Source: Mizuhopecten yessoensis (Eukaryota). From it: a stretch of DNA of 64,000 nucleotides. Under the pieces are notes generated by a model. The model was given only the letters and a program-made list of their open reading frames with translations, had not been told where the DNA came from and ran no database searches. The DNA is taken from the NCBI RefSeq assembly GCF_002113885.1, contig NW_018408881.1, positions 1,171,659 to 1,235,658 on the forward strand. The letters run 5' to 3'. This document shows positions 17,364 to 54,003 of the stretch, in pieces; positions within the stretch are counted from its first letter, which is position 1, and each line of letters begins with the position of its first letter. A program made the position numbers and the translations under genes.

Positions 17364-18026
17364 TTACAGAGATACAATGGCTGGAGCATCAGCCTCCCTC
17401 TTCCTCAGAGAAACAATGGCTGGAGCATCAGCCTCCCTCTTCCTCAGAGAAACAATGGCTGGTGCATCGGCCTCCCGCTTTTTCAGGGAAACGATGGCTG
17501 GAGCATCTGCCTCTCTCTTCCTCAGAGAAACAACGGCTGGAGCATCAGCCTCCCTCTTCCTCAGAGAAACAATGGCTGGAGCATCAGCCTCCCTCTTCCT
17601 CAGAGAAACAACGGCTGGGGCATCAGCCTCCCTCTTCTTCAGAGAAACAACGGCTGGAGCATCAGCCTCCCTCTTCCTCAGAGAAACAACGGCTGGAGCA
17701 TCAGCCTCCCTCTTCTTCAGAGAAACAACGACTGGAGCATTAGCCTCCCTCTTCCTCAGAGAAACAATGGCTGGAGCATCGGCCTCCCGCTTCTTTAGAG
17801 ATACAACGGCTGGTGCAGCGAAGGCTACAAAGGGGAAAAAAGATCGATTATTTGAATTTAATTTATATTTTATTTTAATGAATTTTAAATAATAAGTTAT
17901 CAGTATAATAGCTTAAAATATATTTATTAAGTATAAAGAGTTAGTATTTTTTTTTAAAGCAATTGTAAACTCACCAAAAGTACTCAGACACAGCACGGCC
18001 ATGAACGAAATCCACTGAATTTTCAT
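17364..18026 (-). CDS. Secreted multi-copy peptide precursor, 170 aa; CDS complement join(17975..18026, 17364..17824)
   Basis: Exon 2: acceptor TTTCAG (AG 18039-18038), ATG 18026, MKIQWISFMAVLCLSTF, phase-1 donor GTGAGT at 17974. Exon 3: acceptor CTTTTTTCCCCTTTGTAG (AG 17826-17825), reading AFA-APAVVSL then 11 x (RKR or KKR)-EADAPA(I/V)VSL (one unit EANAPVVVSL), TAA at 17366-17364. 52+461=513 nt, in frame. Confidence 0.9.
17367..17815. repeat. 39-bp coding tandem repeat, about 11.5 units
   Basis: Unit CAGAGAAACAA(T/C)GGCTGGAGCATCAGCCTCCCTCTTCCT; encodes the peptide repeats on the minus strand. Confidence 0.97.
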
Positions 18027-18129
18027 GTCTGATTGTTCTGAAACAATGAAACGACACAGTATAAAGCACAACCTCGTTAATCAATCCACTCAATATTTAA
18101 GGACAAAGTCCCTACTCTTAATCGTCTCA

Positions 18130-18428
18130 AATGGTAGTTGTTATTCCCTGCTTACTGTTCAGCAATTAAGGGGAATGGCAACACCTGGTTCACCCGTTGT
18201 CAGTATAATGGAATCGGGCGGAATGCTGTGATGGCTGCCTTCGGCATGGTATATCAGTGAGATGGCACTATAAAGTCGGCATCAGATCCGCGCTATCACA
18301 AGGAGGCAATAACACCAATATACACAGTCTCTTGCACACATACACACATGCATGCTTACACAACACTTACGGAGACACGTTCTTGAATGACCTTGGCTGC
18401 TACAAATGGGACGTTAAATAAAATAAAA
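18130..18428 (+). mobile_element. SINE (dominant family) in intron 1 of the precursor gene
   Basis: Same core and AATGACCTTGGCTG...GGACGTTAAA tail as the other copies. Confidence 0.8.
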
Positions 18429-20591
18429 CTTATCACGTTCACAGTCCAGATATATGTATTTAAGCTGGGGAAGATGGTGGCTAGATTATCAAATCTCCCC
18501 TTACTAATATTAAAAGTCAGTGATACACATTTTAACGCACGCGTTTTTGAGGTATATTTCTTTCTCGGTGATGGAATTCAAAGCTACATATATATATATA
18601 AATTTAATTTCTTTTTGCGGAATGGAGTTAAATTAATTTGATCCTGGTATCACTCTACTGGAATAGCGATATGGTTACATTAAAGTGATCGATTGTTTCC
18701 GGTTTCCGGAAAAATAAACAGAGTATCGATAATGCTTGCCTGTTATAACCAAAATTTTATGAGTGTGACAATATAAAACTAATCGTTAATGTCACCTATA
18801 TTTCAATAATATGGCAGATTATAATCTTCCAGAAAAAAAAACATATGGTATTAAACATGATACTCATTTAATTCCTATTACATGTATTATAATTCTAAAG
18901 CCTTCAGATAAAATTATTCAACAGTTGCATCTAAAAAACGTCGTATTAAAATTAAGGCTTTGCACCATTTGGCATAGGTAACTCAAAGATTTTTTTATTA
19001 TTTTTTATATTTTCTGTTAAGTTTTGTTTACAAATAAATGTTATACATCGTGTAATTATACAGTGTCGTGTATGTGGCAAAATCACCACTTTTTATCGTC
19101 GCTTTATATAAATAGGAAATGCACTTCAATAACTTGAGTTATTAATTGATATCTAGCAATGCGTAAATGACGTTATTGATAAAACTTGCCGCAACGAATA
19201 TAAAAGTGTGGTTAACCCTTCATCTGCTCAAAACCTAATATCGGCAAGTAAGAATGTTTCATATTACAGTTTTGCAACAAAGATATTGAAGTGTTTGTTC
19301 CAAACAGTTTTTGAATTCGAGATTTCATTATTAATGGTGAATTATATTTTACGTTGAATATTTATAACAATCCCAGCAACAAACATAACAAATACAAAGC
19401 GACTTTGAATAAAGCGGTACTCAATTTATCACATTATTTAGAAGCGTAAGAAATTACAAATGTACCTTGTGAACAAAAGATTAATTCATTTGTAATATTG
19501 GATACTGGTTTACCACACCATTCTTCCTTTGACTATAGTTAAAGCATTATGAAATAAAATGTTTGTAAAGCAAAATGTATACATTGTATATACTCTTAAT
19601 ACAAGTATCATGAATTATCGTTATACTTTGGATACATATTAGATATGGTTGTTTTGTTTTAAAAGAATCGGCATGGAAAACCGACCACATCTTGTTTATC
19701 AAAGTTTATCAAAAGAATCTTGTTCATAGGAAATTTAACAAAAATGTGTTGGTGAACGAAAAAATATATGGAATTAATTTGGCCTGAGCTAATTGCTTAA
19801 ACTAAAACTATTAATTTATTATAAACCTGTACATCTTGTTAACATTAATATTATGTTCCAGTTCTTGTGTTTGTACACAAATTAACAATTGAAACATTTA
19901 GGAACTAAAGAGCTTTTGACAAAAGTTCGCTGTTCTCTGCAATACAATACTTTCATTTTAAAAAGCTTGATCGCTTTACAAATACAAAACTAAAATTCGG
20001 AAACTTATGTTCAGGATTAATACAAATGTTTAGTAAAAACCCAAACAATTATTGCGAAAGTTTAACTTCTGTGTAAGAATTTTTTTTACTTTTTTGCATA
20101 ACCTAGATTCTTGAATTATAGGTGACATTGTTGCTGCTTCATGCATAGAAAACAGGTTTTTAACTCGACGATAGGCAGTTTTAACAAACTCTTTTACACA
20201 ACTTTGAACGTTCTTGACACAAAATAAAAAAAACCCAGTTTAAATGTAAAGATATAAATGAAAACTCCTATAGCATCATTAACAATTTAAAATACAGTTT
20301 GTATAGATAATAAGACAATTTAATTGAATTCATTTTTGCAATTGCAGTACTGTTAAACCGAATTTCATTATTTACTGTCATAGTATAATAATATAACCTA
20401 AACTTCGGCATCAGTCACTTGGCTACTGTTTGCCTTAGTTTAACAAAATTTTAATTATTTATATAAAACATATATTGATTTATTTACAAATTTAAAATTA
20501 GTTCATGATATATTTACATTCGTTCAGTATATACATACATAAATAGTACATTAGCTCATTCAAATTAATTTTTAATTTGGAAAAGTCTTAC

Positions 20592-20686
20592 CTTTTCAAG
20601 CTGGTAGTGTCTTTATCTTGACAAAATTGTCGGAGTGAAAAGCAGGGATTATAACGATTTTACTTAGATCCGCATCAGCTTTTATA
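20592..20686 (-). promoter_or_regulatory. Probable TATA promoter and non-coding exon 1 of the peptide precursor
   Basis: TATAAAA at 20686-20680 (minus) and a consensus donor AAG|GTAAG at 20592/20591, about 60 nt after the expected TSS (about 20655). Exon 2 begins with an acceptor, so an upstream exon is needed. Confidence 0.65.
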
Positions 20687-21552
20687 GGCAATTATCAGGT
20701 ACATGTCATCTTGGGTTGGTAAAACACATTATTTATGCAGTTTAAAAGAAACCATTAAGCATCACCTTCAAGTCGACATCACTTATCATGAACCAATAAA
20801 AATATTCCAAGTGATTTATGTGAATGTCCATGCCATCAGACAATGCCCCGCCGGACAGGTACATTAATGTTGTTTGATAACCACATGTGACTAAATTATT
20901 AAGATTTAGCACACGAATATAGGATACACGTTCCTGGCATTGGTAATTAATTCTTCGAAATTTCGTAATAATGCTGAAACCGCTTTCCAAGAAAACAAAA
21001 ACATATATATATTGCTACTCTTTCCTAAAAGAAGTAAAGGGCGCCGTCTATCCTGGTAAACATCTTTGATATTTTGTCACCAAACGTTTTTAAGCTGTTT
21101 ACATAGCTCTACCATCAAATGGATGTAGGTTAAACTTGTTGTAGTGTCGATTAGTTTTATTTTACACGAATAACTGTCTTTCTGTTTGAACTGGTGTGCA
21201 TGTTACTATTTTAACAGTTTGTAACGTAGTCTTATAAAGTACAACAATTGTTCTCATCACCTGTCGTTGATTTTGAAGCACTGCAATAATCTTTTTAATT
21301 TTTCGAAGCAATTTAAATGATAAAAGATAGATGGATATGCATATCAACACTATGAAACAACCTGCATGTACTTCCATAGCTCCATGAACCTGTTATTCAT
21401 AAACGCCCTGAATATGACCTCTGAAGTTTTAAAAACCTTACATATATATATATATATACATAAATATGTATTTTCATTTTCATACAATAATATCAAGTAC
21501 TCTCAGCATCTCTATCAATTCTATAAGTTTGAATTCATGCTTGTTGCTAGGC

Positions 21553-22880
21553 TTGGTTTGGTTTTGGTTTAGTTTTGTTTAACGTCCTATTAACAGGTAA
21601 TGTAATTTAAGACGTGCCTCCATGTGTGAAGTGTATGCGGGCTTGCGTGTGTATATGTAGGAGACAGGGTATGTTGGTGTACCTGCCTCCTTGTGATAGC
21701 GCGGATCTGATACCGACCTTAGAGTGTTATATATCACTGAAATGTCATGCCGAAGGCACCAAGCACAGTATTCCCCCCGGTCACATTATACTGATAACGG
21801 GTGAACCAATTGTTGCCATTCCCCCGTAATGCTGAACGTTAAGCAGGGAATTACAACTACCTTTTTAGCCCACCACCATCTGATTATGGGCTATTCAAAT
21901 CGCCCTGCGTCCGTGGTCCGTCCGTCCGTCCGTCCGTCGTCCGTCCTTAAACAATTCTTGTTATCACTTTTTTTCAGGAAGTAACAGAGGGATCCTTCTC
22001 AAATTTTATATGTAGGTTCCCCTTGACCCCTTTTTGTGCAACTTTTGACACTGAAGGGTTGTTATGGCTATTTCACAGGAAGCAAAAGAGGGCCCTTTCT
22101 CAAATTTTATATGTAGGTTCTCCTTGGTCCTTAGTTGTGCAGGGCAACTTTTGGGACTGATCGGATAAACAAGATGGTCGACAGGCAGCCATCTTGGATT
22201 TTGACAGTGAAAGTTTGTTATCGCTATTTCTCAGGAAGTGCTGGAGAGATTCATCTCAAATTTAATATGTAGGTTCTCCTTGGTCTGTTGTTGTGCATGT
22301 TCAATTGTGAGACTGATCGGATATAGAAAATTGCCGAAAGGCCAATATTTTGGATTGTGACATTAAAGATTTATTTATCACTTTTTCTCAGGAGGAAATG
22401 AAGGGATCTTTCCCAAGTTTGTTATGTAGGCTCTTCTAGGTCTGTGGTTGTGCATATTGAATTTTGAGAATAATCAGATTAACAAAATGGACGACAGGCC
22501 ACCATCTGTGATTGTGACATTAAAGGTTTGTTTTCATTATTTCTCAGTAAGTACTGGAGGGATCTTTCCCAAACTTGTTATGTAGGTTTCCCTATGTCTT
22601 TCGTTTTGCATATTTACTTTTGAGACTGATCCGATAAACAATATGGCCGAGAGACAGCCATCTTAGATTTTGATAGTGAAGGCTTGTTGTCACTATTTCA
22701 CTGAAATGCCATGCCGAAGGCACCCAGCACAGCATTCCACCAGGTCATATTATACTGACAACGGTTGAACCAGTTGTTGCCTTTTCCCTTAATGCTGAAC
22801 GTTAAGCAGGGAATAACAACTAACATTTTTTGGACTTTGGTATGTCCCGGCCTGGGGACAGAACCCATTGCCTTCCAACA
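21553..22880. mobile_element. Composite: SINE(-) 21553-21865 / HINE-like element with about 156-bp internal repeats 21862-22697 / SINE(-) 22697-22880
   Basis: TTTTAGCCCACC start, GTCC microsatellite and repeated ATGTAGGTTCCCCTTGG...CAGCCATCTTGGATTTT units, flanked by SINE cores. Confidence 0.75.
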
Positions 22881-25800
22881 ATTGCTGAACCTTAAAATAA
22901 ATGTATATGCTTTGTTTAACTAAGGACAGCAAATTTGAATAATTGCCTGTCTTTTAATTTTAATGTATAGTTGGATGTGACGACGTAAAATTTAAAGAGG
23001 AATTGAAAAGCAATCATCGAACTGTATTAATTGTTCTGTAAGGAGTTAATGAACAAACTCTGCTTTCAAGCCGTCATTGTTTTCCAAGCATAAACAGGGG
23101 ATAAACAGAAAAATCCAAACACCTCCCCTCCCACTTACTATATGATTGGATAGAGCAATGAACATTGAGGACCTGCAAAAATTACTATTTATTAATTCTA
23201 GTCTTTCCAATGTACTCTGCTTAGCTTAGAGTACATTGTGAAAGACTAGAATTAATCCACTGCGCCTATTCTAACACTTTGCATAACTATCCTAGTATCC
23301 TTCCTCAATTACCATTTCTTTCCCTGGGTTATCCATCTTTGCAGGTCGGCGATTGAGAAATGAATATCGTACGAGGCCACTTATGTAAAAACCCGTGCAG
23401 AATTTAGGATTCGATTTTGTACCCTCTACTAGGGGAAACAAAAACGACCAAAATAAATCTGCTGCACCCATTACAATATTTGGGAAGTTAATATTTCTCT
23501 CTATTTCTAACATAGCGCGTTGCTTGGCTGTATCTCACTCTAGGCTGTAGTGAAGGATGTTCTCCCAGGTGACGAAGGCAATGGGTTCGTCAGTATTTTT
23601 ATTCAACAAATATTTTTATTTTTATAATATTATTTTGTGGTAACATACACTTGGGGATCTGTCGGTGTCTCCCTCTCGTCCTCTTATGACCCTGACTGTT
23701 GCAAGGACGTTAAACCACAAATATGTACAAAAACACATTGTAAACAAATACATAAACCACAGTGTCATACACAAGGTCGGGAATTTAAAGCTATACAAAA
23801 CACAGCATGTTGTTCTGACGCAAAATGAACCACGGAACGTAATACTTCATGAATATTCCTTGTCTACTTTTCAAGTTGTACGTGTCATTTCTCACGAGAA
23901 CGTGACGTTTTGAAAAAATCAGTAAGGCGCCGCTCCTTGTTCCGAGACCTCCCTTACCGGACTTTGATAAGCGATAAAGATTGTTCAACCTCATGATACA
24001 TGTAAACAGAAGGACTATTAATGATAGTTATCAAATTTAATGTAAACAGCAGCTAAAGTGCATTTACGGCATCAAACGTTGGCATTTGTGAACATCGGTA
24101 GGCTTGATATCCTATCACAACTACGTTTAATAGCCAATCATTTTCTATTTTATCTTATCGTTTAGATTGCAAATTTTCTGTATCGCACATGTCGAGAAAA
24201 TAATTGCAGATATTACTTCCACATGGTAAAACAACATTTTAAAACTGAAAACGAAATAAATTCAATTTTTCTTAGGGGAAGTTGAAGTACGTTTCTATAT
24301 GTATTTAAGCCTATATTTCACACATATTTTACATGTGTTTAAAAGAACTATTTAATTCTTGAAATTTCAAGTATTTGCATTTATTTCGTTCAAATGCAAA
24401 ATAGAAACAAAATGATACATTAACACGGGCCATTATTATTATTTCCAACTGCGTATAACTTAAATAAGCCTGCACCTAAGTTAACGCCAATGAATTAATT
24501 AAGGACGTATCATCATCCACGTAAACACATGTAATGTCGATTAATTGGCTTGCTTTATGGGGAAATCTGACAGATAAAAAGGGTTCCTAATATGTACCTG
24601 GAAAAGAAAATTCGAGAATTTGCCGACGTTTGTCACGAACATGGCTTGGCTGACCTCTAGGATGTACAGGTCGACGTAGAACCCTGAATATTTTTAGTGA
24701 TAATCCCAACTTTTTATATTTTATTTGAGAAGGTTTAACATTACTTGAAAGTATTTCAACATTATTCAAAAATGCCTGCTTACCATTAAGCATCGTTTTA
24801 AGCTTCGAATGTAGGAAATATTAACTACTTTTAAGTGACAAACAAACAAACAAACAAATATGATATAAAACAAGTAACATTCTAGCCAGAGAATCGTCTC
24901 TGAAAGAGCGGTCGCATGTAAACATATCCTATAAATAATGTCGACATCATTATTCTCTTGTCAGATCATGTCGACAATGTTTAAAATTAGGTTGACATAT
25001 GTATTTCTGAAGTCGAATTTTGATGGCAGAAATCTGCCACCGTTATAATACAAATAATAGAACAAATTATCTGAGAAATTGTAACATTGATGATAGTTTA
25101 TAAAGCCGTCATTAAAATACTTATAAGTATTGCCATTACAGCAACGTTAAATGATTTTTTATACTGCTTCAACACAAATACATAGTAAAAGTATATGAAA
25201 TGTTATATCTTCACATACTACCCAGTTAAAATGGACCTTTCTATTCACACCGTTGATTGGATTTACAAGTTTATACAAAATTTATATGAAGAGACTGTAG
25301 AATCAGTGCTTGCATAGGTACTCTTTTGTAACATGAAATATGGTATTTACATGTACATAACTACACAATTGACAACTTATTTTTTGTTTGGACATCGGAT
25401 CAGATAATTGCAACAAACGGCAGAATTGCGCTGAGCAACCGATTGAAAATGGCAATCTGCCTTGTTATCAAGCGAGACGACATTTGAACAAGGTGTAAAT
25501 ATTTCGCTACTAGTTCTTATGCTGCAACATTTCGTCGTTTTACTTTTTTTTTAAATGTAATAAATGGAAAATTAAACGTTTTTTCCGTTGAATACCATTT
25601 ATGGTTCACTGATATGGAAGAATATTTTTTCACTCGTGCTTCCGATTCGTGAAGATATTGATATTCTCCCATACTCGTGAAAGATATCTGGAATTCAACG
25701 GAAAATTATTAAATATTCTCTGTAGGTGAGTTACTTAAATTCTGTAATACTGCCTGAACACATATCATGAGCTGCATTGGTATATATGTTAATCGAAATT

Positions 25801-26506
25801 AACTATTCCCGTATAATAACACCCAAACAAGTGGTTCGACCTTACCAATTGGAAAAAATATTAATCCGCTCATGAGATTAGTTTTGGAAGAGAAAACGTT
25901 GTTAACAGCCAAAAGTAGATTAGGCATAAGAGAATGTATGTTTCGGATACCCCGAAAGACCCTAGTTTTTACCTCCGACTTTAACAATGGCATCTCCCTC
26001 AAAAGCTTTTAAACGTCATGTTATTATTTAACTGACCTTAAACTTTAATGAAAAAGAATACAATAGGTTTGGTCTAAAGAACTGTTTGGTGATTATTGTA
26101 ATTTTTTAAATTGCCCCCCCCCCCCAACACACATCCTCCCTCAAAATGAAAATAAAAATATTGAAACTTCTTGCCGACTTACACTATTTTTCAGTCATGT
26201 TACCTGAAACAACCTGAAACAAACGTATTTTGTTTCCATTAAAACCATACAGTTTGGCTTCAACGCAGGCAGCCATATCAACTTAATGTAGCGGGAATCG
26301 TAATGACTCTGATGCAATTACTATTTTTCTGGTTGTTTGTGTGACTGGTGCGTATTTTTTTTAATTCCAAGAAAACGCATTCAACCTGGTCATCAGCTTG
26401 TCACGGTGGTAAAACCTGACAAGATAGGAGGCGGAGCTTCGCCAGTAAAAAGGTTTTTTTCTCGTTATTTCTAGGACAACGCTCCAGTAGGCACACATAC
26501 ACCGAG

Positions 26507-29500
26507 ATGATGACCGGTAGCGTAGTATTGGTGGTATTTGTGTGTGCTAGGGCAGTGTTAGGCCTGCCTTATCTACGTAAAGCAGACCATTACAATGATT
26601 CTGGGCCGCTCTTAAAGTTACCAGATTTGAACAAAGAAGTGTATTATCAACATATGAAATTACCTCTGCGTACATTTGTCGGAGAAAAGGTTTGTATATC
26701 ATCACCATTCTTGTGATAACAAATTCATTACAAATGGTCCGTATCAAATTAGGGTGTAAGTATAATCGAATAACGATCTTGGGTATATCTGCATGTTTTT
26801 GAATGGTTTTACCATATTTTACAGAAAATTGAATATGGCTGTTCGGCTTTTCCTCTGAAGGCAGACGAATACATTGGTAAGTATTGCTTACTTTATATTT
26901 CAAAAGATTTTACTGTGAAATGAAAGTTTTATGTAATTGCCAATTTTACAAAAATAACTCGTGTCTATGTTTTGAATTAAGATATAGTAATGATTCAGAA
27001 TAAATTCTAAAAAGTGAAATGAGTGTCATGCATTTGTTTTGTGTGGGTTTTTTTCTGTTTCGTAGTTAATGCAAATAAAGATAGATTGTATGTTTTATAT
27101 ATTGTATATATAATTACAACATGTGTGTATAATATCAGCTATACATAACTTATGCTTTTATGTTCATTTGCCGCTGTGAACTAGAACAGCTTACAACGTT
27201 TTATACATTATTACAGCCTGTGTGAAAACTACATGTTATACATAAATACAGCGCGTGTACAAAGTAGTCCCAGACTTGTACTGCTCGTGAAAACAATAGG
27301 TTTGTACTCCGTCCACCAGTCGGCAAGTCCGCCCAACCGGCAGTGCATCATTTTTTTTCTTGGCCATATCTCGGAAACTTTGTCATCTTCAATTTCCAAA
27401 TTTTGTATGTTAATTACTCTTGAGATGATCAAGTTTTGCGTATAAAATCATGTCGTATGTTCAGCTCTATACTATACAAATATATATAGTGTGTCCAATT
27501 CGATACTGAAATCTGATGTTATTTGTTATATATTAACTACGTGTTCTGTACATAACTACCAGTATTGTTGGTATTATATGTTATATACAGGAAATGTTAA
27601 CCACGTGTTGTGTAGGTATTGTATATTATATTAACAACTACATATTGTAAGGATATTATTTGCTATTTGTAATATCAGTCTGTATAGGTATTATCTTATA
27701 TACACCTTCCTCGAGTAAATTTTACTCGCTTGTATAGTGCATCTATTACTTTATTATACATGTATGTCTTTCCTCTCTAAGTCATGAGTCAATTTTAATT
27801 GTTATTTACAGTCGAGTATTTGCCCATCGGAGAACGAGATGATGTTTATCACATAACAGTCGATGTATGCGACGTCCCCTATGATGAAGCTCCTATTTGG
27901 TGAGTTGTTCTGTCATTTGCAAATGAGAACTTAGTGATGTTAATATTTATGTTAATATGCTAAATGGAATATCTGTAGATGTTGTTAGATCTTGGTGTGA
28001 AATAGAGGTAATTATTTGCAAATTTTGAGCATAACACTTACCAGCCCGAGAGCCCCCTATAACGTCAAAGAGGAAGTGACGTCACTGAATATTAGTATAG
28101 CTTTATCGAAATCTCAATATTATCTGTATTATACGTACATGTAAGCTATACAAAACAAAACAAGAACAAGTAAATTCACAACTGCAGAACAAAAAGAGAC
28201 ATGTTTGGAACAGTCGGAAGTATGATTCATTATTATCATGGTGTTGATATTTCGAACATATCTATTTTGGTTTATTTATTTATTCATTTCATATATTATT
28301 CGCCGAATATTTCAGTAAATTGCCATCAAGCAATTTGGATCCGTACTTTCTCGTCCAATTTAAACATGGTAGATGCTAAATTTTCCACGTGTCACCCCGA
28401 TTCCTTATATATCTCACCCCTGCAGGTCGGGATCGAGAAAAGAATGCACCTGCTGTTGACCACTGCCATGTATCGTTCGAGACTCATGTGGAAGCTCCCT
28501 TCAGAATTGGGGATTTTGTTTTGTACTTTTTATTAGATGACACGAAAGCGACCAACAAAAATTCTGCTGCACTCATTACAATATTTAGGATCTTCCTTTT
28601 CTTTCTACTTCTAACTACCTTTTATTTCCTAGCGTCTTGCTTGGTTCACCCGTTGTCAGTAAAATTTGAACGGGCGGAATGCTGTGCTGGGTGCCTTCGG
28701 TATGGTATTTCAGTGAGGTAGCACTATAAAGTCGGCATTAGATCCGCGCTATCACAAGGAGGCAACTACGCCAACATACCTTGTTTCCGGTTCACATACA
28801 CGCTTACACAAAACACATGGAGGTACGTCCTTAAATTACCTTAGCTGTTAATAGGAAGTTAAACAATATGAAACCAAACCAAACCGAAAATGTCCCCAAC
28901 CCATTCACCACTCCTTTTTCGTTTCTTACCCGTTTTATAGAGGTACAAAATACAATACATTTTGTTTAACTATGTTTCAGGGAATGCGTTGACCCGACGC
29001 ACGTTTGTAAAGATCACAAGAGAGAATTCCTGTATTCCTGGACGAACGGGGCCCCCGGTTGGACCCTACCAGAAAGTAAGTCACCGACGTACTGTTATGA
29101 ATTCTTTTTCGTGAAGGATTGTTTTTTACTTTAATTTGCGGGGACACTCATTTGAAAAATTAAATTTCCTCAAACAATAATTGAAAATATAATCATAACC
29201 AATATTGAAAAAACATCCTCGCTTTAGCAAGTTTATGTATTCGCAAATAAAGAACGATATATTTTCGAAATTAACTGCACTGAACAAAAGGTGATTTAAA
29301 GAGTATAATCAACAACGATTACAACCTGTATTATAATATTCTTACTTTATCCGATACATTGAAATAAAATTGTGTTTAGTCTAAACCATTTTGTAGGATT
29401 TGTATGACGGGAGATAACAGATAACACTGCTGTTGCCTTGCCTTTTCTTCTTCTTACTTATGTCGATTTTTAGTTGAAATATATTTTTTCTTGATGGCGC

Positions 29501-32500
29501 TGTTTAATATTTGCTTTTTCACCTTTTCATTCATTCGAATGTATATAGTCAATAAAACACTCTATTAAAAATATTTGTACTACATACTTGTTAGGTGGTC
29601 ATGACGTCATGACATTGTGACATTATAATAATAAGAAGATAGCACTAACCGATGATTGCTATTGAACTAACGAAGTACTACTTTCAATTTTAACAAAAAC
29701 TGTGATTGAAATAAAAGAATGTATCATCATATTGTGTGAATCTTGAAAACTACAATCGTGAAAATCTTTGTTTTATTTTATATATCAGATACCGGAATAT
29801 ACACCGGTAATAAACCCCGGTATGTTATAATACAAGTCCATGGACGTGACGACATCTCAGGTAAATTCACCTTTGGATAATTTAAATAAGGAAAGTAAAG
29901 GATACAATTTAAAACGTGCATCCCAATGCAATTACACAATGTAAGTTATACATGTGTGTAAACATAGCATCGAGGTCGTTCAATTTCCCTGAGCATGTTT
30001 AGGTAAAAATTTATGATGTACATTTCCGTATACGCTATATACACGATAAAATGGGGCTTCGTCTCGATATGGTACTATGTACATGTATATATGTACACAA
30101 GACAAAAATGTTAATACCGAAGTTTGTCCACAGCATATGTTGTTAGGGCCCCATATAGAGGATGCGGGTGAGCGATACTAATTCGAATTTTCGTCTGTCA
30201 CAATAAAACAAGGTATCAACTGACCAAAGGTCAAGGTCACTGGGTCAAAGGTCCAGGTCAAATTTTGTGTCTTCCCTGATGAACATTTTGTTATGACATT
30301 ATGAAGCAAAGATGGTTGGAATTTAACAAAGAGTCAGCTGACTTAAGGCCAGGGTCACTGGATCAAAGATTAAGGTAAAATTCAGTATCTTTTCACTGGG
30401 GAACATTTTGCTATGACACTTTGAAGCAATGTTGGTCAGAATTAAACAAGGAGTCATTTGACCAGAGGTCAAGGTTACGTGTTCCAAAGGTTCAATGTCA
30501 AGGTAAGGTTTTGTATTTTTCACTGATGGACATTTTGTTATGATATTATGAAGCAAATTTGGTTGGAATTGAAAAATGAGTCAACTGACCAAAGATCAGG
30601 GTCACTAAGTTAAAGGTCAAGGTCATTTGGGTCCAAAGGTCAAAGACAAAGTTGATCTCTTACTTTGACCCTGGCTTTTGATGGGGGAAGTATTTAAGGC
30701 TAACAAGTGAGTATTGCACCGGTATTTAAATTTCTGTAAGCCCAGCAAATATGGAAGTGGAAAGAAACAAGACTCACATCATAGTACATGTAAAATGTCT
30801 ATTTTGCTTCCTTGCAAATGTTTTTGAAGTCCAAATGTCAAACTTCAAGCTCAGCTATATGGGCAGATTGCTTCTTGATGATTACGGGGGATATATTGCC
30901 ACAAGACGAGGCCCTTACTGACCTGTCAGTGTTCTAGTTTCACCTACGTTGACCAAACTTGCTAAAGTTTTAATGTATCTTGGGAGGCATGAGTGTCGAA
31001 TTCTAAATTCGGGTCTCGGGTCCCACTATATAAAGCGATATGGCCCTTTGTTAATATACAGGATTTTTTCTATTGTCTAATAAGGGGAGACATATGTTTT
31101 TGTTCACAAAACCAAAATTCTAGTTAAAAAGTGTGACACATTTATTGAGAGAGTACACAGTATATAAGAATACGTATTCAAGATAAATTCTTATACATGT
31201 GCAGCTTTCTTTTTAATATCTTTCGACAACAATATGGGATATGCGTCGATTCTGTTAATAAAAGAATGATTATGTACGCATGTTATGTACATGATAAATT
31301 TGTAATCCAAGTTTCCTCGAGTTTTTTCTTCTCGTTTTCAGAGGAACGTGTCTCGGACTTCGCACACATGCGTTTGAAAATCCGGACCACCCGGTGTGTA
31401 TCACTCCTACTAACTATTAATCAAACACACATTACAAAATGTTAAACAACTTTTAACACATTTTCTTATAATTATATAAACGTCACTCATTCAACATCGA
31501 TGTCTACTTTGTGTTATCCTCTTTGTTATGATGCCCAATAATAGACAATAGACTGTTACTGATATTAACCCGACAACAAATATATTTAATATTAATAATA
31601 CTTTCATAAAATTATTTTTATCCGCTGCTATATTTATACTAAGTAAACATAATTATCGAACTGTGCTATCTTGTTTCCACCAGTCCCCGACTAGCTGCAG
31701 CTGTTAGTAGATACGCCGGCACCGGCTCTATACCTCCTCACGTAGAAAGTAAGTATATTATCATGTACATATTGATGAATAATACGTACGAATAATCACT
31801 ATGATCACATGATGTGATGTATTTTCGTATACAAATCCATATATAATAAACTAAAATTTGCAATGGTGTTTTTTTTTCAAAAAATAAAACAAAGTTTCAT
31901 TTTGTTGAATTATTGGTGATTGAAAGTCTTTCAAGGCGTATTTTCAATATCGCCGATATATGACATGAATGAAACAGAATGCACTTTATCAGAACTAGGT
32001 GATCATTTTTGAATAAACGAATTTTAAGATGAACTCAAATAAAATATAAAAGAATAACAATAAAAAATAATTTTAAAAAGCAGATATCAAAATTGTTAAA
32101 ACAGAGTAACACAGGGAAGTTTTTCACTTACACCATTAAAAAGTACATATAGAATAGTATCAGGTGTTCCGAATTCAATTAAAAAGACAAGCACTTATCT
32201 AGGTCACAATTATATAATATGATAACTTCAGTTTTGTTGAGGAAGGTACATGCACTGTGTTTATTCTACCTTTAGATTTCACCGTTGACACTGCGTGTGT
32301 ATGGAACAGGACAACACCTACGCCTATATTAGCTTACGGAATACATACACACGGTAGAGGTCAGTCATTATGTACCTGACGTCAAGTACACATACAGGAA
32401 ATCTTAGGGACGACCTCTTCATTCAAGTTGACGTGTGTCTTTTACTTTTACGTTTGTTTTATTTCATTTCAACAAAGTTTATTCATGACGTTGTATGAAT

Positions 32501-35500
32501 TGGATCGAACAACAGGCTATGCCTATATCAGTTTTCTCCTGCATGCATTTGTATTAATCAGCATATATATATTATAATTTATAGTGAAACGAAAGATGTA
32601 AAAAAAACAGACAACTTATATATAAAACAGATATCAATGTGCAAGTCATGTGGTAAAGGTAAGATAATTCTAACTGCTTCTGAAAGTTCACAAGTCAAGC
32701 TGTGCTCCTTCCTGACCTCACCGGAGTAATGAGTGAGTTTAAGTCATATTCCTTTACTAGATTCTCCCCGGGAGTTCAAAATCCACACAGAGTGACTCAT
32801 AGATAGTTGAATATTCGGCTTATTTAATTAAATATTATTAATAAGCTATGTCAATATTGTATGGTATATCAATATTCACATTAATAATACGTTAAGAATA
32901 TAATTATACAACTACTTGTTATTAATTACAAAATACAAGTCCATGTTGATTTAAGGGTGAGTATATTATATTAACGTTTGTTTGATAACATTTTTAATTT
33001 TATGTTTTTATCGACAATTTGTCGGCCCTAATGACTAACACAGATTGGCTGTTGACCATATAATGATAATAACAAAACTCTTCATTACTGCATTACCTGT
33101 TGTCAGTCTAGGTAATTTGTAATACTTACATATATATATATATATATATATATAACATTTTTATAATGTCATGTATTTACTGAAATCAGCTCCTGCATAT
33201 ATTACTTTTATTAAACATATACAACTGGTCTTAGTTTTTATTTACGAGAGTGTCAATGTCTTTATAATTGTGACTTGTTTTAAAACAATAAATCCATATA
33301 ATATCATCGTACCAATGTCGAGATTTTGGGTTTAAGTTAATTTTAGATCTAAAATTTAGTTAAGGATATGCAGACAAATACACAAGCATTTGAATATGAC
33401 GTAATGACAATTGTTATTTTAAAATGGAAAATTTAAGTTGTATTGAACTTCATGAGAACTCGTTTAAATTATGAATTAAGATCGATATCAAATTACAGAC
33501 ACGATTCTCACAAAAACTGTAACGTCCTAAGAGGTTTCTCCGCAATGATTTTAGGTGTGAAATGGTTAGGGCAATGCCAATAATATTTTGACGTAAGGGA
33601 TCGGGCCGTTGCGGTTTATGGGCAAATCGTCTGCCCCCACCCATCCCTCCTGTTTCATTTTATACTCTTTTCTAATATTAGGAGTTGCATTGTCCGGTTA
33701 CATTGTGAGAAAAGGCAAATGGATCGAGATTGGACGTGGTGATCCGGTGTACCCACTGGTAAGTTAGTGTGTCGATATCAGAATATGTGGCATATAGTAT
33801 TGATAGAACAAAATATGAAAAGGATTCAATGTTATTTTAATCTTAGGTGTATCAAACTTTCACTATTTATTCCATGTACGTTTAAAATTGTATTTGCATC
33901 GGTTGAACACGGAACATTTATTTCGCCTACCAATGGAGCGTGTACATACACAATCTGTCGAATAGTTATTAGCTGTTAGCTTCTTCCTCCAACTAGTAAC
34001 TACCAGTCCGTCTTGAAACGTTGCAACACATTAACATGTACATATTTTATCTGAAAAATGTAATTCTATTTTTTCAAAATTGATTTATGTTGTTGAAGAT
34101 ACAAAACGGAGTTGATTTACTGTATTCGTAGTAAAATCTATAAAATAAAATTGTGTATCATTATTACAGACAATGTTTGACATCACAGAGAGAAATATTT
34201 GGCTTCAACCCGGAGATGTTGTAGTAAGTACTGAATGTTTATTTCAATAAAGCAGCACCAGATTTTTTTTGTATGCATTAACATTATGCGGTCGAGGGAA
34301 ACAGTTCATCTGGTGGGTCCCAACTCCGAGGGAAAATGGGTTTGACTGTTGACTGATAAGGCATGAAACAACTGTTTTGTTACTTGATCAATGAAAAACA
34401 AAAATTTGAGTAAGTCACAATCCAACATTTCAAAAAAAAACAAAAAAACTGGAACACTTATAGCTAGTGGTAATGAATATGTAGGTTTTGCACCACTCCG
34501 TGTAAATTCAGGGGATACCGTCTCACCGACGCAGTCTCATATTAATATAATGTAACAAATCAATGTTTACTAAACAAATAAACAACAAATTAATGTCCTT
34601 TCTAGCTAGTGGTAATGAATGAAAAATGTTTCATGTAAACCATATCTGACTTACAGCATGGAATTTTTGTGTACGTAGTCCTGCATAAAAACCTTTGAGG
34701 TGCTCATTCAATGTTTGTACTTCTGCCGACTCAAAGTCGGTTATTGGTATTTTCTTTGCGTCACATAATGCGGCTAAAATTATGACGGCCCCCTTTATAA
34801 TATTCTTCGTGTTAGCAGCGTCATGGTTCTCAATCAGTTGAGGTAAGGATTCATCACTGATTTCTTCAAACCTGTCCATGTCGAATGTACCGACAGACGA
34901 CCGTCAACAATCCAGTACCAAAAACGCTTGATCATCGGGGTGCTTGTAATTATAGGTGCTTTCGATTACCTAACACGTGACCAGTCAACAGTCGTAGGGT
35001 AGCAAGCACCAGTTCATCACGTGACCAGTCAACAGTCGTAGGGTAGCAAGCACCGATTCATCACGTGACCAGTCAACATTTTTACGGTAGCACACATTAG
35101 CTATAGTTCGTTTGGTGAATTGTCTGGGAAACAGTTGAAATTGATTAATATGCATTTATATAGCGTGTCAGGTAACAATTTATACTGTTTCATATAATCC
35201 TTCCCCTATGGTGTACTGTGAAATCAGATATTTCGTGGGGCCCACATTTCGTGGTTTCCCGAAAAATAATTCATGAGGACATGAATTCATGGATTACAAG
35301 TACCCACTAATACGGAGAATTGCTTTATGTCAAACTTGAATTACTCAGTAGACCTTTGAATTCGTGGAGGATTACCCACGAACTCAACAAAATTAAAGAC
35401 CCTTCGAAAATGAGTGATTTCAAAGTATTTCAACATTTGCTTAGAAACACATTAGATGTGTATTTTCATTCCTTTGATAAACAGTATATCTAATGTGTCC

Positions 35501-36329
35501 TTACGTGATGAAACGGCCATATAGTGAAGTAAAAATGTAGGTTTTGTTCAGCTTCTTGCATTGAAAGTTTGAAGTGTTTAAATTGGTGCTTCCTTTTTAG
35601 GTATATCTACTTATTATTTGAATGATTTAATTTTGCATTTATCCTGGTTCCTTTTATTTAATTCAAATTTACGCAACATATGCCTTGTTATCCACCTGAA
35701 TTTAAGGTAATGTTTCCAATACATTGTATGTTCAGTGCCAAATGTATCAAATCTGTGTATTACGTATCTAGGCAACGAGATGTACCTACCGCAATACCGG
35801 AAACACACGAATCCAGATGGGGTAAGACTGTTAAAAGATTTCTCTCTGTAATGTAGGCAAGGTCAAATGAGAAATGTTTGAATTGAAAACATATTTGAGA
35901 AAATGCTTTAAAATATTGATATGTTGTCACTACGAGTTATCCATACCTCGGTACGTTGGTAGTGGATAAGTGTAATTTTGTAGAAGACCAGTGTAAGTTT
36001 ATAGTACACCAGTGTAATTTTTAAGAGGACCAGTGACAGTATATCTGATCTCTTTGTTCACTTGTGATCAATAAAATATGTATATAATTTATTGACTCCA
36101 TATTACTTATATTTTCAGGTTCAACCACGTCAATGAGATGTGTAACTATTTTTTGTATTACGGTGTTTCTTCCGATTCAATTGCTGAGGCCAAGTCACTA
36201 GCGTGTTCAAGAGAGGGGGGAGGATGGGACCAACTGTTTGACAACATCCCAGCTGACGCAAGCGATCCTAGTGGCGACACGGAACAGTCTCGCTTTGTCA
36301 AAAAGTACCATCTTACCAGAAGTTACTGA
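26507..36329 (+). CDS. Divergent monofunctional peptidylglycine alpha-hydroxylating monooxygenase (PHM)-like copper monooxygenase, 360 aa, secreted; 12 exons: 26507-26689, 26825-26876, 27812-27899, 28981-29075, 29789-29860, 31342-31393, 31684-31748, 32276-32359, 33682-33758, 34170-34223, 35772-35821, 36119-36329
   Basis: All introns are GT-AG with compatible phases; total 1083 nt. Signal peptide MMTGSVVLVVFVCARAVLG. PHM-colinear motifs: EYGC, DVYHITVDVC, FLYSWTNGAPGWTLP, YVIIQVH, SIPP, LAYGIHTHGRG, SGYIVRKGKWIEIGRGDP, PGDVVATRC, NEMCNYFLYY, LFDNIPADA. Eight PHM core Cys are retained. AATAAA at 36525-36530. Confidence 0.92.
28641..28890 (+). mobile_element. SINE (dominant family, 5'-truncated) in PHM-like intron 3
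   Basis: Core plus AAACC tail. Confidence 0.8.
30110..31125 (+). repeat. HINE-like element with about 120-bp internal tandem repeats
   Basis: Four units containing TGACC...GGTCA(A/G)GGTCAC at about 30217, 30335, 30455 and 30582; 3' end ...TTCTAGTT. Confidence 0.55.
34631..34879 (-). mobile_element. Crypton-like (DUF3504-associated tyrosine recombinase) N-terminal remnant in PHM-like intron 10
   Basis: RFEEISDESLPQLIENHDAANTK...TDFE...LNEHLKGFYAGLRTQK matches my recollection of CryptonA/KCTD1/ZMYM-type N-termini; a 45-bp tandem repeat with CACGTG lies upstream (34973-35080). Confidence 0.6.
35215..35427. mobile_element. MITE
   Basis: Termini TACTGTGAAATCA...TGATTTCAAAGTA. Confidence 0.55.
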
Positions 36330-37539
36330 AAGGTTATTTACAGTCATCGTTTTTATCATTTAAACATGTAACGAGTACTTCATATAATGGTTTTCTAACA
36401 GTGACAGTTTGGGGGAAAACAAATCAGACAAACAAGAAACTTTTGGTGTTTAATGTTCGCCGTACCGATGCCAAAACTGTTAATATTAATTCGAAACCTC
36501 TTTTACTGTCATTGAAATTGCTTTAATAAATCTTGTTTGAAAATGATCTCCTGTCTAACGGAAAAAGCCCTGAAAATACTTCAAAGATGGAATTAAACAG
36601 TAATGCTTATAAAAAGTGCTGCGAGAGTAAAAAAGGGACTAGGCCGGGATTCGAACCCTTGGCCTCCAATCATCAGAGCATGGTGGCTATAAACAACAAT
36701 TTAGCTAAGTGATCAGCGATAGTTCACGGACCAAGTCGCACTATGCTTGCATCCAAAAACGATATTAAGGGGAGGTAACTGTTTGTATACAAAAAACACA
36801 GATGAATTATTTTATATTTGCCGACAACTGGATAAAAACCTAAATTATTCATAGTTTTCCATACGGAAGCAATACATCCTGTCTCCGGTAATATTACACA
36901 CACGCACGCTTACACAACACACATGGAGACACGTCCTTAAATGACCTGAGATGTTGAAAGGACGTTAAAAAATAAAAGCAAACCAAACCTTTGAAGGGTT
37001 AGATGCTATTATCTGCTTAACAAACAATATTTAGGTAATGACAACAACTGGTTCACCCGTTTTAAGCATGATGTGATTGAAAGAAAAGCTCTGCTAGGTG
37101 TCTGCGGCATAGTATTTCAGTGAGATATCACTATAAAATCGGCGTCAGATCCGCGCTTTCAAGGAGGTAAAAACACCAAAATACCCGAGACCTATACACA
37201 AATGCACACATTCACAAAAACCCATGAGGCATGTCCTTACATGCCCTAAGCTGTTGACGTTAAACCCTATAAACCAAACCATAATGGTTACAATACTTGT
37301 ACATCTACATTTTCGACAAAACTATAACGTACATGTATAATAGCGTACTTGATAGTGTTGAAAAAGGTGCCAAAGTAAGGACTGCAAAAATCAAGACTTG
37401 GCAACTATTTTTATGTTGTTTTCAGTTTATCATTATTATTATTATTTTAATCCAAAACAAGAGACCATATTCTTATTAAATACTATAGTGTGCTATACAT
37501 ATTTCACTGGCAAACTTTGTCGGCTCCAACTGTTGAAAC

Positions 37540-52367: not shown

Positions 52368-54003
52368 ATGGGGAATTCCTGTAGCGAGCTAATTACATCA
52401 GTTGTGGTCCTACCAATCACGGCGGGGAACTATCGGAGGCGACAGAATGGCTCCCGGTATTATGACGGTACCCTATCGTCCTTAGTTTTCTTCCTCATCT
52501 TCCTCGCAACCGTCATCATATTAACCTTCAGCAAGGATATCGATATTGGCCAAGACAAGCGTCTTGCGATCGTTTTCATTTTACTGGCTGTGATCATGGT
52601 ATTAGGTATGTTTGCATGTGCTATCGTAGGATGTTTTATAAAAACATACGGACTTGGCCGTGTGGTGTTGAGGAGACAAGAGAGAAGTGTTACCAAGCTA
52701 CAGTTAATCTTCCTCTGGATATTTGGAATAGGTTCGGGCTGGCTTTCTGCTTTCCTTGCAGGACAGCAATTCCAATGTGATATTTTAAGTCAAAAGATTG
52801 ACGGAGGGGGTGATGTTTTCTGGTACTCCAGAGGAATTTTCAATGTCATTTTGACGATTATTTTATTCATACAAATAACTTTCATCAATTACTTTGTTCA
52901 GTTTCAAATGAAGTGTTCAACATCCGTCCGTTACTCATTATTTATCCTTGTGGGTGCGAATGTGTCTGTATGGTTGCATAGCATCATCACAGACAACGAA
53001 TCATTCCCTGAGAACATTCCAGGCAAACACTTCCGAAACAACAGTAAAATACTTGCCTGTCTACGAAACGAGACTATTGGATTCCTTCTCGACATTTCAA
53101 ACCCAATTTTAGATCCATGTTTACTTGAGTTTTGTTTGTTGTCTACAATGTTGCTATTTGAGATGTGGTCTCCAAATACTCTACAGACCTCTTCTGAAGG
53201 GACCTTCTCAAGAGACGACTCTCGAACGTATCGGGACAATGTTGAATCGAATTATACTTTGAACGATACGGAACGAAATCCGCTCCTAGGAAACGCAAAT
53301 CAAAATCCCGAAAACAGTCTATCTAGACACGGAGTCACCCGAACAGTGTATCATCTCATTGTCCTAGTGCTAAGTATCGTTGTTACAATAGGAAACGTTA
53401 TTTGTTACGTTGTTTGGGTGATGCACCCAAACAGTGGCCAAATTCGACTGGTTATAGAACAATTTGGTTTAGTCGAATTATGCCGCTACGATCGGGGCGA
53501 TTTTGGTGGGATTTTATTGTCTTGTTCATTATTGTATACCAGATCGGGAACCTAAACTCCTGACGGTCAGTGAGAACGTTTACCTATCGTCTGCTTTTGC
53601 TATGATCATGATGGGCTTCTGTGAAATTCTAACAGGTAACTTGTCGCCAGATAGCACCTCGGAATCGACAATAATATCGCACGTTTTCGGACTCGTACAA
53701 GTTTATCTGCAAGTTGTGTTTCTGCTTCATGCCAACAGATGTCGAAAATCTAACCAACATTTAAACATCCACGTACTGGATTGTGTATTGATATTCCTTA
53801 CAGTTATCAATATTAATTATTGGATCGTAGATAGCTTCGTACTTACTTCGTTTCCAGGCATCAGGAATGTTGAAAAAGTTGTCCTTGGTGGCACTCTATG
53901 GAATCTTTACCATAGAATACTATTACCGGCTGGCGTGTTTTTCAGATTTTCGTCGGTACTTGAGATGTTTACGATATTTGATATCTACAATACTGGTAGA
54001 TAA
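52368..54003 (+). CDS. Otopetrin-like protein B, single coding exon, 544 aa if one extra T (53478/53479) is removed
   Basis: ORFs 52368-53555 and 53503-54003 join into a polytopic protein with otopetrin-like motifs FLWIFGIG, FIQITFI, GANVSVWL, ILDPCLLEFCL..MLLFEMW, QVYLQVVFL, NINYWIVDSF and LPAGVFFRFSS. Confidence 0.85.

What the first reader, a model, noticed from the sequence alone, without database searches (positions are those of the whole stretch)
17364..36329. Candidate animal RiPP-like cluster: repeat-peptide precursor head-to-head with a re-purposed PHM-like copper monooxygenase
Seen: a secreted precursor with 12 short cores and a secreted PHM-like enzyme are adjacent and divergently transcribed, about 5.8 kb apart, with no gene recognisable between them. 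No core ends in Gly, and the enzyme lacks the Gly-carboxylate-binding residues. Known: canonical PHM acts only on Gly-extended peptides. Fungal Kex2-processed repeat precursors (ustiloxin/dikaritin type) cluster with their oxidative tailoring enzymes. Inference: the two genes may be co-expressed in one secretory cell type, with the enzyme modifying the APA(I/V)VSL cores (e.g. aliphatic or C-alpha hydroxylation, or oxidative C-terminal trimming) to make a pheromone, defence or matrix peptide. The linkage could be coincidental.
Basis: partly seen in the sequence, partly recalled or inferred. Interest (0 to 1): 0.95.

Follow-up and report, generated by a model that had tools for sequence, protein, structure and literature searches.

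The report
Ancient peptide-plus-copper-enzyme gene pair
Scallops and a brachiopod keep a gene for many copies of a short secreted peptide right beside a gene for a rebuilt copper enzyme, which suggests that animals, like fungi, have a small gene cluster that makes a chemically modified peptide; the chemistry itself is untested.

Summary
Both genes are real. This is the Yesso scallop. A 3-exon minus-strand gene encodes a 170-aa secreted precursor with 12 cores (mostly EADAPA[I/V]VSL) between KKR/RKR sites. Facing away from it is a 12-coding-exon, 360-aa secreted PHM-fold enzyme (RefSeq XP_021377673). The enzyme keeps the CuM ligands but has R240G, Y318F and H107Y. The linkage is not chance. The same head-to-head pair occurs in Ylistrum balloti and Pecten maximus, and an unannotated one occurs in the brachiopod Lingula anatina (unit 10/14 identical, same exon plan), while other neighbours differ. 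Precursor promoter traces lie beside two more scallop paralogs. The enzymes form an R240-less, PHM-like group under purifying selection. Best reading (about 0.6): a RiPP-like unit in which the enzyme oxidises the peptide, most likely at the C-terminal Leu. Not shown: co-expression, activity, or any modified peptide. H107Y argues for slow or altered catalysis. I found no description in the searchable literature. The scan had noted only this same stretch, not the pair on other DNA.

The parts
20679..20686 (-). TATA box of the precursor gene
   Evidence: sequence; conserved in Ylistrum, both P. maximus loci and the second Mizuhopecten locus
20592..20655 (-). precursor exon 1 (5' untranslated; start approximate)
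   Evidence: donor conserved in Ylistrum and P. maximus chr8; no RNA reads seen here
17975..18037 (-). precursor exon 2: ATG at 18026, signal peptide, phase-1 intron
   Evidence: matching exons in P. maximus, Ylistrum, Lingula
17364..17824 (-). precursor exon 3: 39-nt repeat encoding 12 peptide units and KKR/RKR sites, stop at 17364-17366
   Evidence: a few RNA reads incl. 3' UTR in run X24
26507..26689 (+). enzyme coding exon 1 (signal peptide; splice acceptor just upstream, so a 5' UTR exon is unlocated)
26825..26876 (+). enzyme exon 2 (Y79 equivalent, first Cys)
27812..27899 (+). enzyme exon 3 (CuH site: Tyr in place of H107, H108 kept)
28981..29075 (+). enzyme exon 4
29789..29860 (+). enzyme exon 5 (Q170, H172 kept)
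31342..31393 (+). enzyme exon 6
31684..31748 (+). enzyme exon 7 (pocket residues L206 to Ser, M208 to Tyr)
32276..32359 (+). enzyme exon 8 (R240 to Gly; CuM H242, H244 kept)
33682..33758 (+). enzyme exon 9 (Q272 to Leu; group-invariant Tyr254)
34170..34223 (+). enzyme exon 10
35772..35821 (+). enzyme exon 11
36119..36329 (+). enzyme exon 12 (new His at rat S310, M314 and N316 kept, Y318 to Phe, group-specific C-terminal tail, stop)

Best explanation
The two genes are one ancient biosynthetic unit, a RiPP-like pair. Both enter the secretory pathway of the same cell. Convertases cut the precursor at K/R-K-R, carboxypeptidase removes the basic residues, and a dipeptidyl peptidase probably removes the leading EA, leaving many copies of an 8-mer such as DAPAIVSL with a free C-terminal Leu. 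The PHM-fold enzyme uses its intact CuM/O2 site to abstract a hydrogen from this peptide, most likely at the C-alpha of the terminal Leu/Val, whose side chain would fit where R240 and L206 were removed. The product would be a Gly-independent amide (loss of Leu), a decarboxylated enamide, or a hydroxylated peptide. Shown: gene models, fold, residue changes, conserved linkage, purifying selection. Inferred: co-expression, processing, enzyme-substrate relation and chemistry.
For: Head-to-head pair in Mizuhopecten (window), Ylistrum (about 59 units), P. maximus chr15 (71 units, flanked by two PHM-like paralogs) and Lingula. Lingula unit scores BLOSUM 53 against the P. maximus unit, versus a maximum of 36 in 500 shuffles and 20-27 in loci without a precursor. 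Other neighbours differ: otopetrin, Kunitz, Mpv17. Precursor TATA and exon-1 traces face two more scallop paralogs, so the unit seems to have duplicated whole. R240 is lost in all 12 group members examined while H108, H172, H242, H244, M314, N316 are invariant. dN/dS about 0.07-0.14. All peptides lack Gly, and the last scallop copy ends VSL-stop, marking Leu as the true C-terminus.
Against: No co-expression or peptidomics data; only about 11 reads on the precursor in one run. H107 is Tyr in the window enzyme, and rat H107A keeps at most about 5% activity (PMC12164859). No precursor repeat seen within 10 kb in Argopecten, Solemya, Tegillarca or the second Mizuhopecten locus. PHM removes the pro-S hydrogen of Gly; an L-residue puts its side chain there, so binding must be re-oriented (inference). 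No PAL-like lyase gene was seen in the fetched flanks. Conserved adjacency can also reflect shared regulation alone.
Confidence: 0.6

Rival explanations
1. Shared regulation without an enzyme-substrate relation: a bidirectional promoter or enhancer ties two genes used by the same secretory cell. The peptides are unmodified signals and the enzyme oxidises something else, such as a small amine or acyl-amino acid.
For: Head-to-head orientation is kept in every case seen, as expected for shared cis-regulation. DBH/TBM relatives act on small molecules. Loss of R240 could simply mean a non-carboxylate substrate.
Against: The enzyme is much closer to the peptide-modifying PHM than to DBH (E 4e-33 against 7e-13). 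It keeps N316, which binds the peptide substrate. P. maximus also keeps a second paralog on the tail side of the precursor.
Confidence: 0.22
2. The window enzyme is a copper- or peptide-binding pseudo-enzyme or a slow partner. Catalysis, if any, is done by His107-retaining paralogs (A type), and the Tyr107 B-type proteins act as carriers or regulators.
For: H107Y in four B-type proteins; H107A rat PHM retains at most about 5% activity.
Against: All other Cu ligands and eight cysteines are retained under purifying selection. The Argopecten ortholog has His-His. A group-specific His at the S310 position near M314 could re-wire the site (inference). Lingula's linked enzyme has the full ligand set.
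Confidence: 0.13
3. Chance neighbours preserved by slow genome rearrangement.
For: Scallop and Lingula genomes are known for slow rearrangement (my background knowledge); the otopetrin neighbour is also kept among scallops.
Against: Only this pair, not its flanks, is shared between scallops and Lingula, and it occurs in at least three genomic contexts.
Confidence: 0.05

Closest known systems
Peptidylglycine alpha-hydroxylating monooxygenase (PHM domain of PAM; rat PHMcc, PDB 1OPM/1SDW)
   Same: Both Pfam domains PF01082 and PF03712, about 25-27% structural identity, TM about 0.69/0.78, CuM His-His-Met, H108, H172, Q170, N316, four disulfide pairs' cysteines.
   Different: R240G, Y318F, H107Y, Q272L, L206S, M208Y; no PAL or membrane part; extra conserved C-terminal tail; the linked peptides have no Gly.
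Fungal Kex2-processed repeat proteins with clustered DUF3328 oxidases (ustiloxin, phomopsin, asperipin; PMC7329392)
   Same: Signal peptide plus tandem near-identical cores between dibasic sites, with one or two secretory oxidase genes a few kb away (22% of KEP genes have DUF3328 nearby).
   Different: Animal host; PHM-fold enzyme, not DUF3328; cores are aliphatic with no Tyr, Trp or His-His for ring formation; product unknown.
Yeast alpha-factor type precursors (KR followed by X-Ala spacers removed by Ste13)
   Same: KR-EA-DA-like spacer after each cleavage site.
   Different: Mating-factor genes lack neighbouring tailoring genes. Here only the first X-Ala dipeptide is conserved across species.
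Plant BURP-domain copper peptide cyclases (PMC12164859)
   Same: Copper His2Met oxygen chemistry on repeated ribosomal cores.
   Different: Unrelated fold; cross-links aromatic residues; often fused to the cores.
Multi-copy molluscan neuropeptide precursors
   Same: Signal exon with phase-1 intron, tandem copies, basic cleavage sites.
   Different: No Gly amide donor; not found in the text or text supplements of the Yesso scallop ganglion peptidome (PMC5996578) or the brachiopod survey (PMC8557429); tied to an enzyme gene.

Membership tests
Copper type II ascorbate-dependent monooxygenase superfamily | PF01082 + PF03712 two-domain fold | tested here: met
Copper type II ascorbate-dependent monooxygenase superfamily | CuM ligands His-x-His and Met | tested here: met
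   H226, H228, M298 align to H242, H244, M314
Copper type II ascorbate-dependent monooxygenase superfamily | CuH ligands His-His and His | tested here: not met
   Y91 aligns to H107; H92 and H157 kept; met in Lingula, Solemya, Argopecten and A-type paralogs
Canonical PHM (Gly-dependent amidation) | R240 salt bridge and Y318 contact to the substrate carboxylate | tested here: not met
   G224 and F302; role of R240/Y318/N316 from PMC12164859
Canonical PHM (Gly-dependent amidation) | Activity on Gly-extended peptides | not testable with these tools
   needs an assay
DBH/TBM/MOXD1 | DOMON domain and about 600 aa length | tested here: not met
   360 aa, only two Pfam domains
Fungal KEP/dikaritin RiPP cluster | Signal peptide plus repeated cores between dibasic sites | tested here: met
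Fungal KEP/dikaritin RiPP cluster | Neighbouring DUF3328 oxidase | tested here: not met
   neighbour is PHM-fold; no DUF3328 listed in any fetched locus
RiPP system (general) | Precursor and tailoring enzyme genes conserved together | tested here: met
   three scallop genera and Lingula
RiPP system (general) | Co-expression of precursor and enzyme | tested here: inconclusive
   only the precursor was laid, about 11 reads in one of four runs
RiPP system (general) | Enzyme-installed modification on the mature peptide | not testable with these tools
   needs peptidomics or an assay
Amidated neuropeptide precursor | C-terminal Gly before the basic site | tested here: not met

The most novel reading that the evidence does not exclude
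This is an animal-encoded RiPP gene cluster older than the mollusc-brachiopod split, in which a neofunctionalised PHM-family copper enzyme oxidises the C-terminal Leu of a secreted peptide, giving glycine-independent amidation or oxidative decarboxylation, a reaction not known for this enzyme family.
Probability: 0.4. Interest if true: 0.95.

Novelty: new variant of a known kind. Interest (0 to 1): 0.86.

Why it matters
Clustered precursor-plus-tailoring-enzyme genes are routine in bacteria and fungi but are not an established feature of animal genomes. A pair kept from scallops to a brachiopod gives a concrete enzyme, a concrete substrate and natural active-site variants (His or Tyr at 107; Gly, Ala or Ser at 240) to test. 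If the enzyme works on a non-Gly C-terminus, it breaks the rule that PHM-family peptide chemistry needs glycine, changes how mature peptides are predicted from invertebrate precursors, and offers a natural experiment on the disputed role of the CuH site. These proteins are currently annotated as ordinary PAM-like.

Tried and rejected
Pfam exon by exon found nothing for the enzyme exons, which are too short; Pfam hits on the repeat are repeat artefacts with no passing stretch. The precursor search found only a Saccoglossus repeat protein, with no locus on record. Two metagenome scans found nothing. A profile HMM built from scallop units alone did not detect Lingula significantly (E 1.1); the Lingula claim rests on the ungapped score against shuffles, its own repeat and its exon plan. 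A weak HMM hit upstream of P0003 was noise. Literature searches for the peptides, accessions and concept found nothing relevant; the library omits most subscription papers. Rejected: non-coding minisatellite (open frame kept over 57-69 units with third-position bias 95 against 10/15 and 106 against 24/24); enzyme pseudogene (intact, dN/dS about 0.1); amidation via the first basic residue of KKR standing in for Gly (disfavoured, because the last scallop copy ends in Leu-stop). Two row labels in my table are misnumbered: true Q272 is L256, and Y254 aligns to L270. CDS recovery failed for P0022, so it is absent from dN/dS. The Lingula N gap and the window's N run were left unfilled.
Full report
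Observation. The minus-strand 39-nt array at 17367-17817 is the last exon of a secreted precursor. With the exon at 17975-18026 it gives 170 aa: a signal peptide, APAVVSL, then 11 units, mostly EADAPA[I/V]VSL, separated by KKR or RKR and ending VSL-stop. A TATA box at 20679-20686 and an untranslated exon ending at 20592 are supported by conservation. On the plus strand, 12 GT-AG exons from 26507 to 36329 give a 360-aa protein identical to Mizuhopecten yessoensis XP_021377673.1, which identifies the genome. TATA to enzyme ATG is 5.8 kb and no gene is evident between them. RNA support is thin: about 11 reads fit the precursor in one of four runs, and the depth at the exon edges fits one spliced read, below the tool's threshold for listing a joint.

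The enzyme. It has both copper monooxygenase domains, matches rat PHM at E 4e-33 against 7e-13 for DBH, and its predicted model (pLDDT 79) matches PHM structures best. In rat numbering it keeps H108, Q170, H172, H242, H244, E313, M314, N316 and eight cysteines, but has H107Y, L206S, M208Y, R240G, Q272L, S310H and Y318F. R240, Y318 and N316 hold the substrate's C-terminus in PHM, and H107A leaves at most about 5% activity (PMC12164859). Relatives at 38-76% identity occur in four scallop genera, Tegillarca, Solemya and Lingula. All lack R240, and all share a C-terminal tail. H107 is Tyr in four scallop B-type proteins, Lys in Tegillarca and His in the rest. Pairwise dN/dS is 0.07-0.14, approximate because dS exceeds 1. 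The tree separates scallop A and B types; the window enzyme groups with Ylistrum, P. maximus chr8 and Argopecten. No canonical PHM was in the tree, so monophyly of the group against canonical PHM was not tested.

Linkage. In Ylistrum a precursor with about 59 units (EA[ED]SPAIVS[LV]) faces away from the ortholog. On P. maximus chr15 a precursor with 71 units (mostly EADVPSIVSL) sits head-to-head 5.4 kb from a B paralog, with an A paralog 5.5 kb away on its other side. In the brachiopod Lingula an unannotated gene lies head-to-head, 3.7 kb ATG to ATG, with the same plan (untranslated exon, signal exon with phase-1 intron, repeat exon) and SADEDLPSMVAL-KKR units on both sides of a 2.26-kb assembly gap, which I left unfilled. 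Its unit is 10/14 identical to the P. maximus unit, score 53 against a shuffle maximum of 36. Flanking genes differ between these contexts. Beside P. maximus chr8 P0022 the precursor TATA, first exon and donor are present but the rest lies off the fetched DNA; the second Mizuhopecten locus keeps the TATA region, followed by a satellite and 9 kb I could not see. Tegillarca has a head-to-head signal-peptide exon inside a 757-aa unannotated-function gene that runs off the locus, which is only suggestive. Nothing was seen within 10 kb in Argopecten or Solemya. So four full pairs in three scallop genera plus Lingula, which amount to two independent lineages.

Mechanism. From general knowledge of prohormone processing, cleavage at K/R-K-R and carboxypeptidase trimming leave a C-terminal Leu, as the final stop-terminated copies confirm. 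One X-Ala dipeptide (EA, or SA in Lingula) is conserved and would be removed by a dipeptidyl peptidase that then stalls before Pro, giving acid-x-P-[AS]-[IVM]-V-[SA]-[LV]. The enzyme keeps the oxygen-activating CuM site and has lost the bulky residues that fit a glycine carboxylate, so I infer it oxidises these peptides at or near the terminal Leu/Val C-alpha, giving an amide, an enamide or a hydroxyl. I put the enzyme-substrate relation at about 0.6 and this specific site at about two thirds of that. Rivals are co-regulation without catalysis on the peptide (0.22), a pseudo-enzyme role for the Tyr107 proteins (0.13) and chance (0.05). The role of the product (pheromone, defence, matrix) is not addressed by any evidence here; its absence from the searchable ganglion peptidome text hints at a non-neural source but is weak.

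Comparison and novelty. It works like a fungal Kex2-repeat cluster (PMC7329392) but is not a member: the oxidase is PHM-fold, not DUF3328. The enzyme belongs to the copper type II monooxygenase fold family but fails the defining residues of canonical PHM. I found no description of the peptide family, the enzyme group or the linkage, within a library that lacks most subscription papers. I class it as a new variant of a known kind, with a real chance of being new chemistry.

Method note. The spliced models were joined only inside local scripts for alignment. 

Noticed in passing
window 52368-54003 (+): Otopetrin proton-channel gene split over two overlapping ORFs that together match a single 525-aa ORF in Ylistrum; a frameshift, either a pseudogene or an assembly error. 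Otopetrin also lies downstream of the enzyme in Ylistrum and P. maximus chr8.
   Followed up: partly
P0001 (Saccoglossus XP_006817504): Hemichordate repeat protein with EAKAYPVL units between RKR/KKR sites, a similar layout ending in Leu; no locus available to check for a PHM-like neighbour.
   Followed up: partly
L003 1695-1742 (-): Tegillarca signal-peptide exon with phase-1 donor, head-to-head with the PHM-like gene, inside a 757-aa Pfam-less gene model; possible precursor.
   Followed up: partly
L006 17598-19695 (+): Lingula 116-aa gene with a signal-peptide-like start directly downstream of the PHM-like gene; no Pfam hit.
   Followed up: no
P0027 (Argopecten XP_069134180): Near-copy of the N-terminal half of the enzyme joined to an unrelated Cys-rich part; partial duplicate or a mis-joined gene model.
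   Followed up: no
L008 144-2445 and L001 27527-33456 / L009 1-510: Long 36-nt and 31-nt satellites sit exactly where precursor introns or exons are expected; the 415-aa gene annotated in L008 is probably just the satellite read through.
   Followed up: partly
window 18170-18340, 21700-21860, 28640-28860, 37040-37270: Copies of a dispersed SINE-like repeat; they account for most RNA reads laid on the precursor intron.
   Followed up: no
window 61.7-62.6 kb: Run of N; left as is.
   Followed up: no
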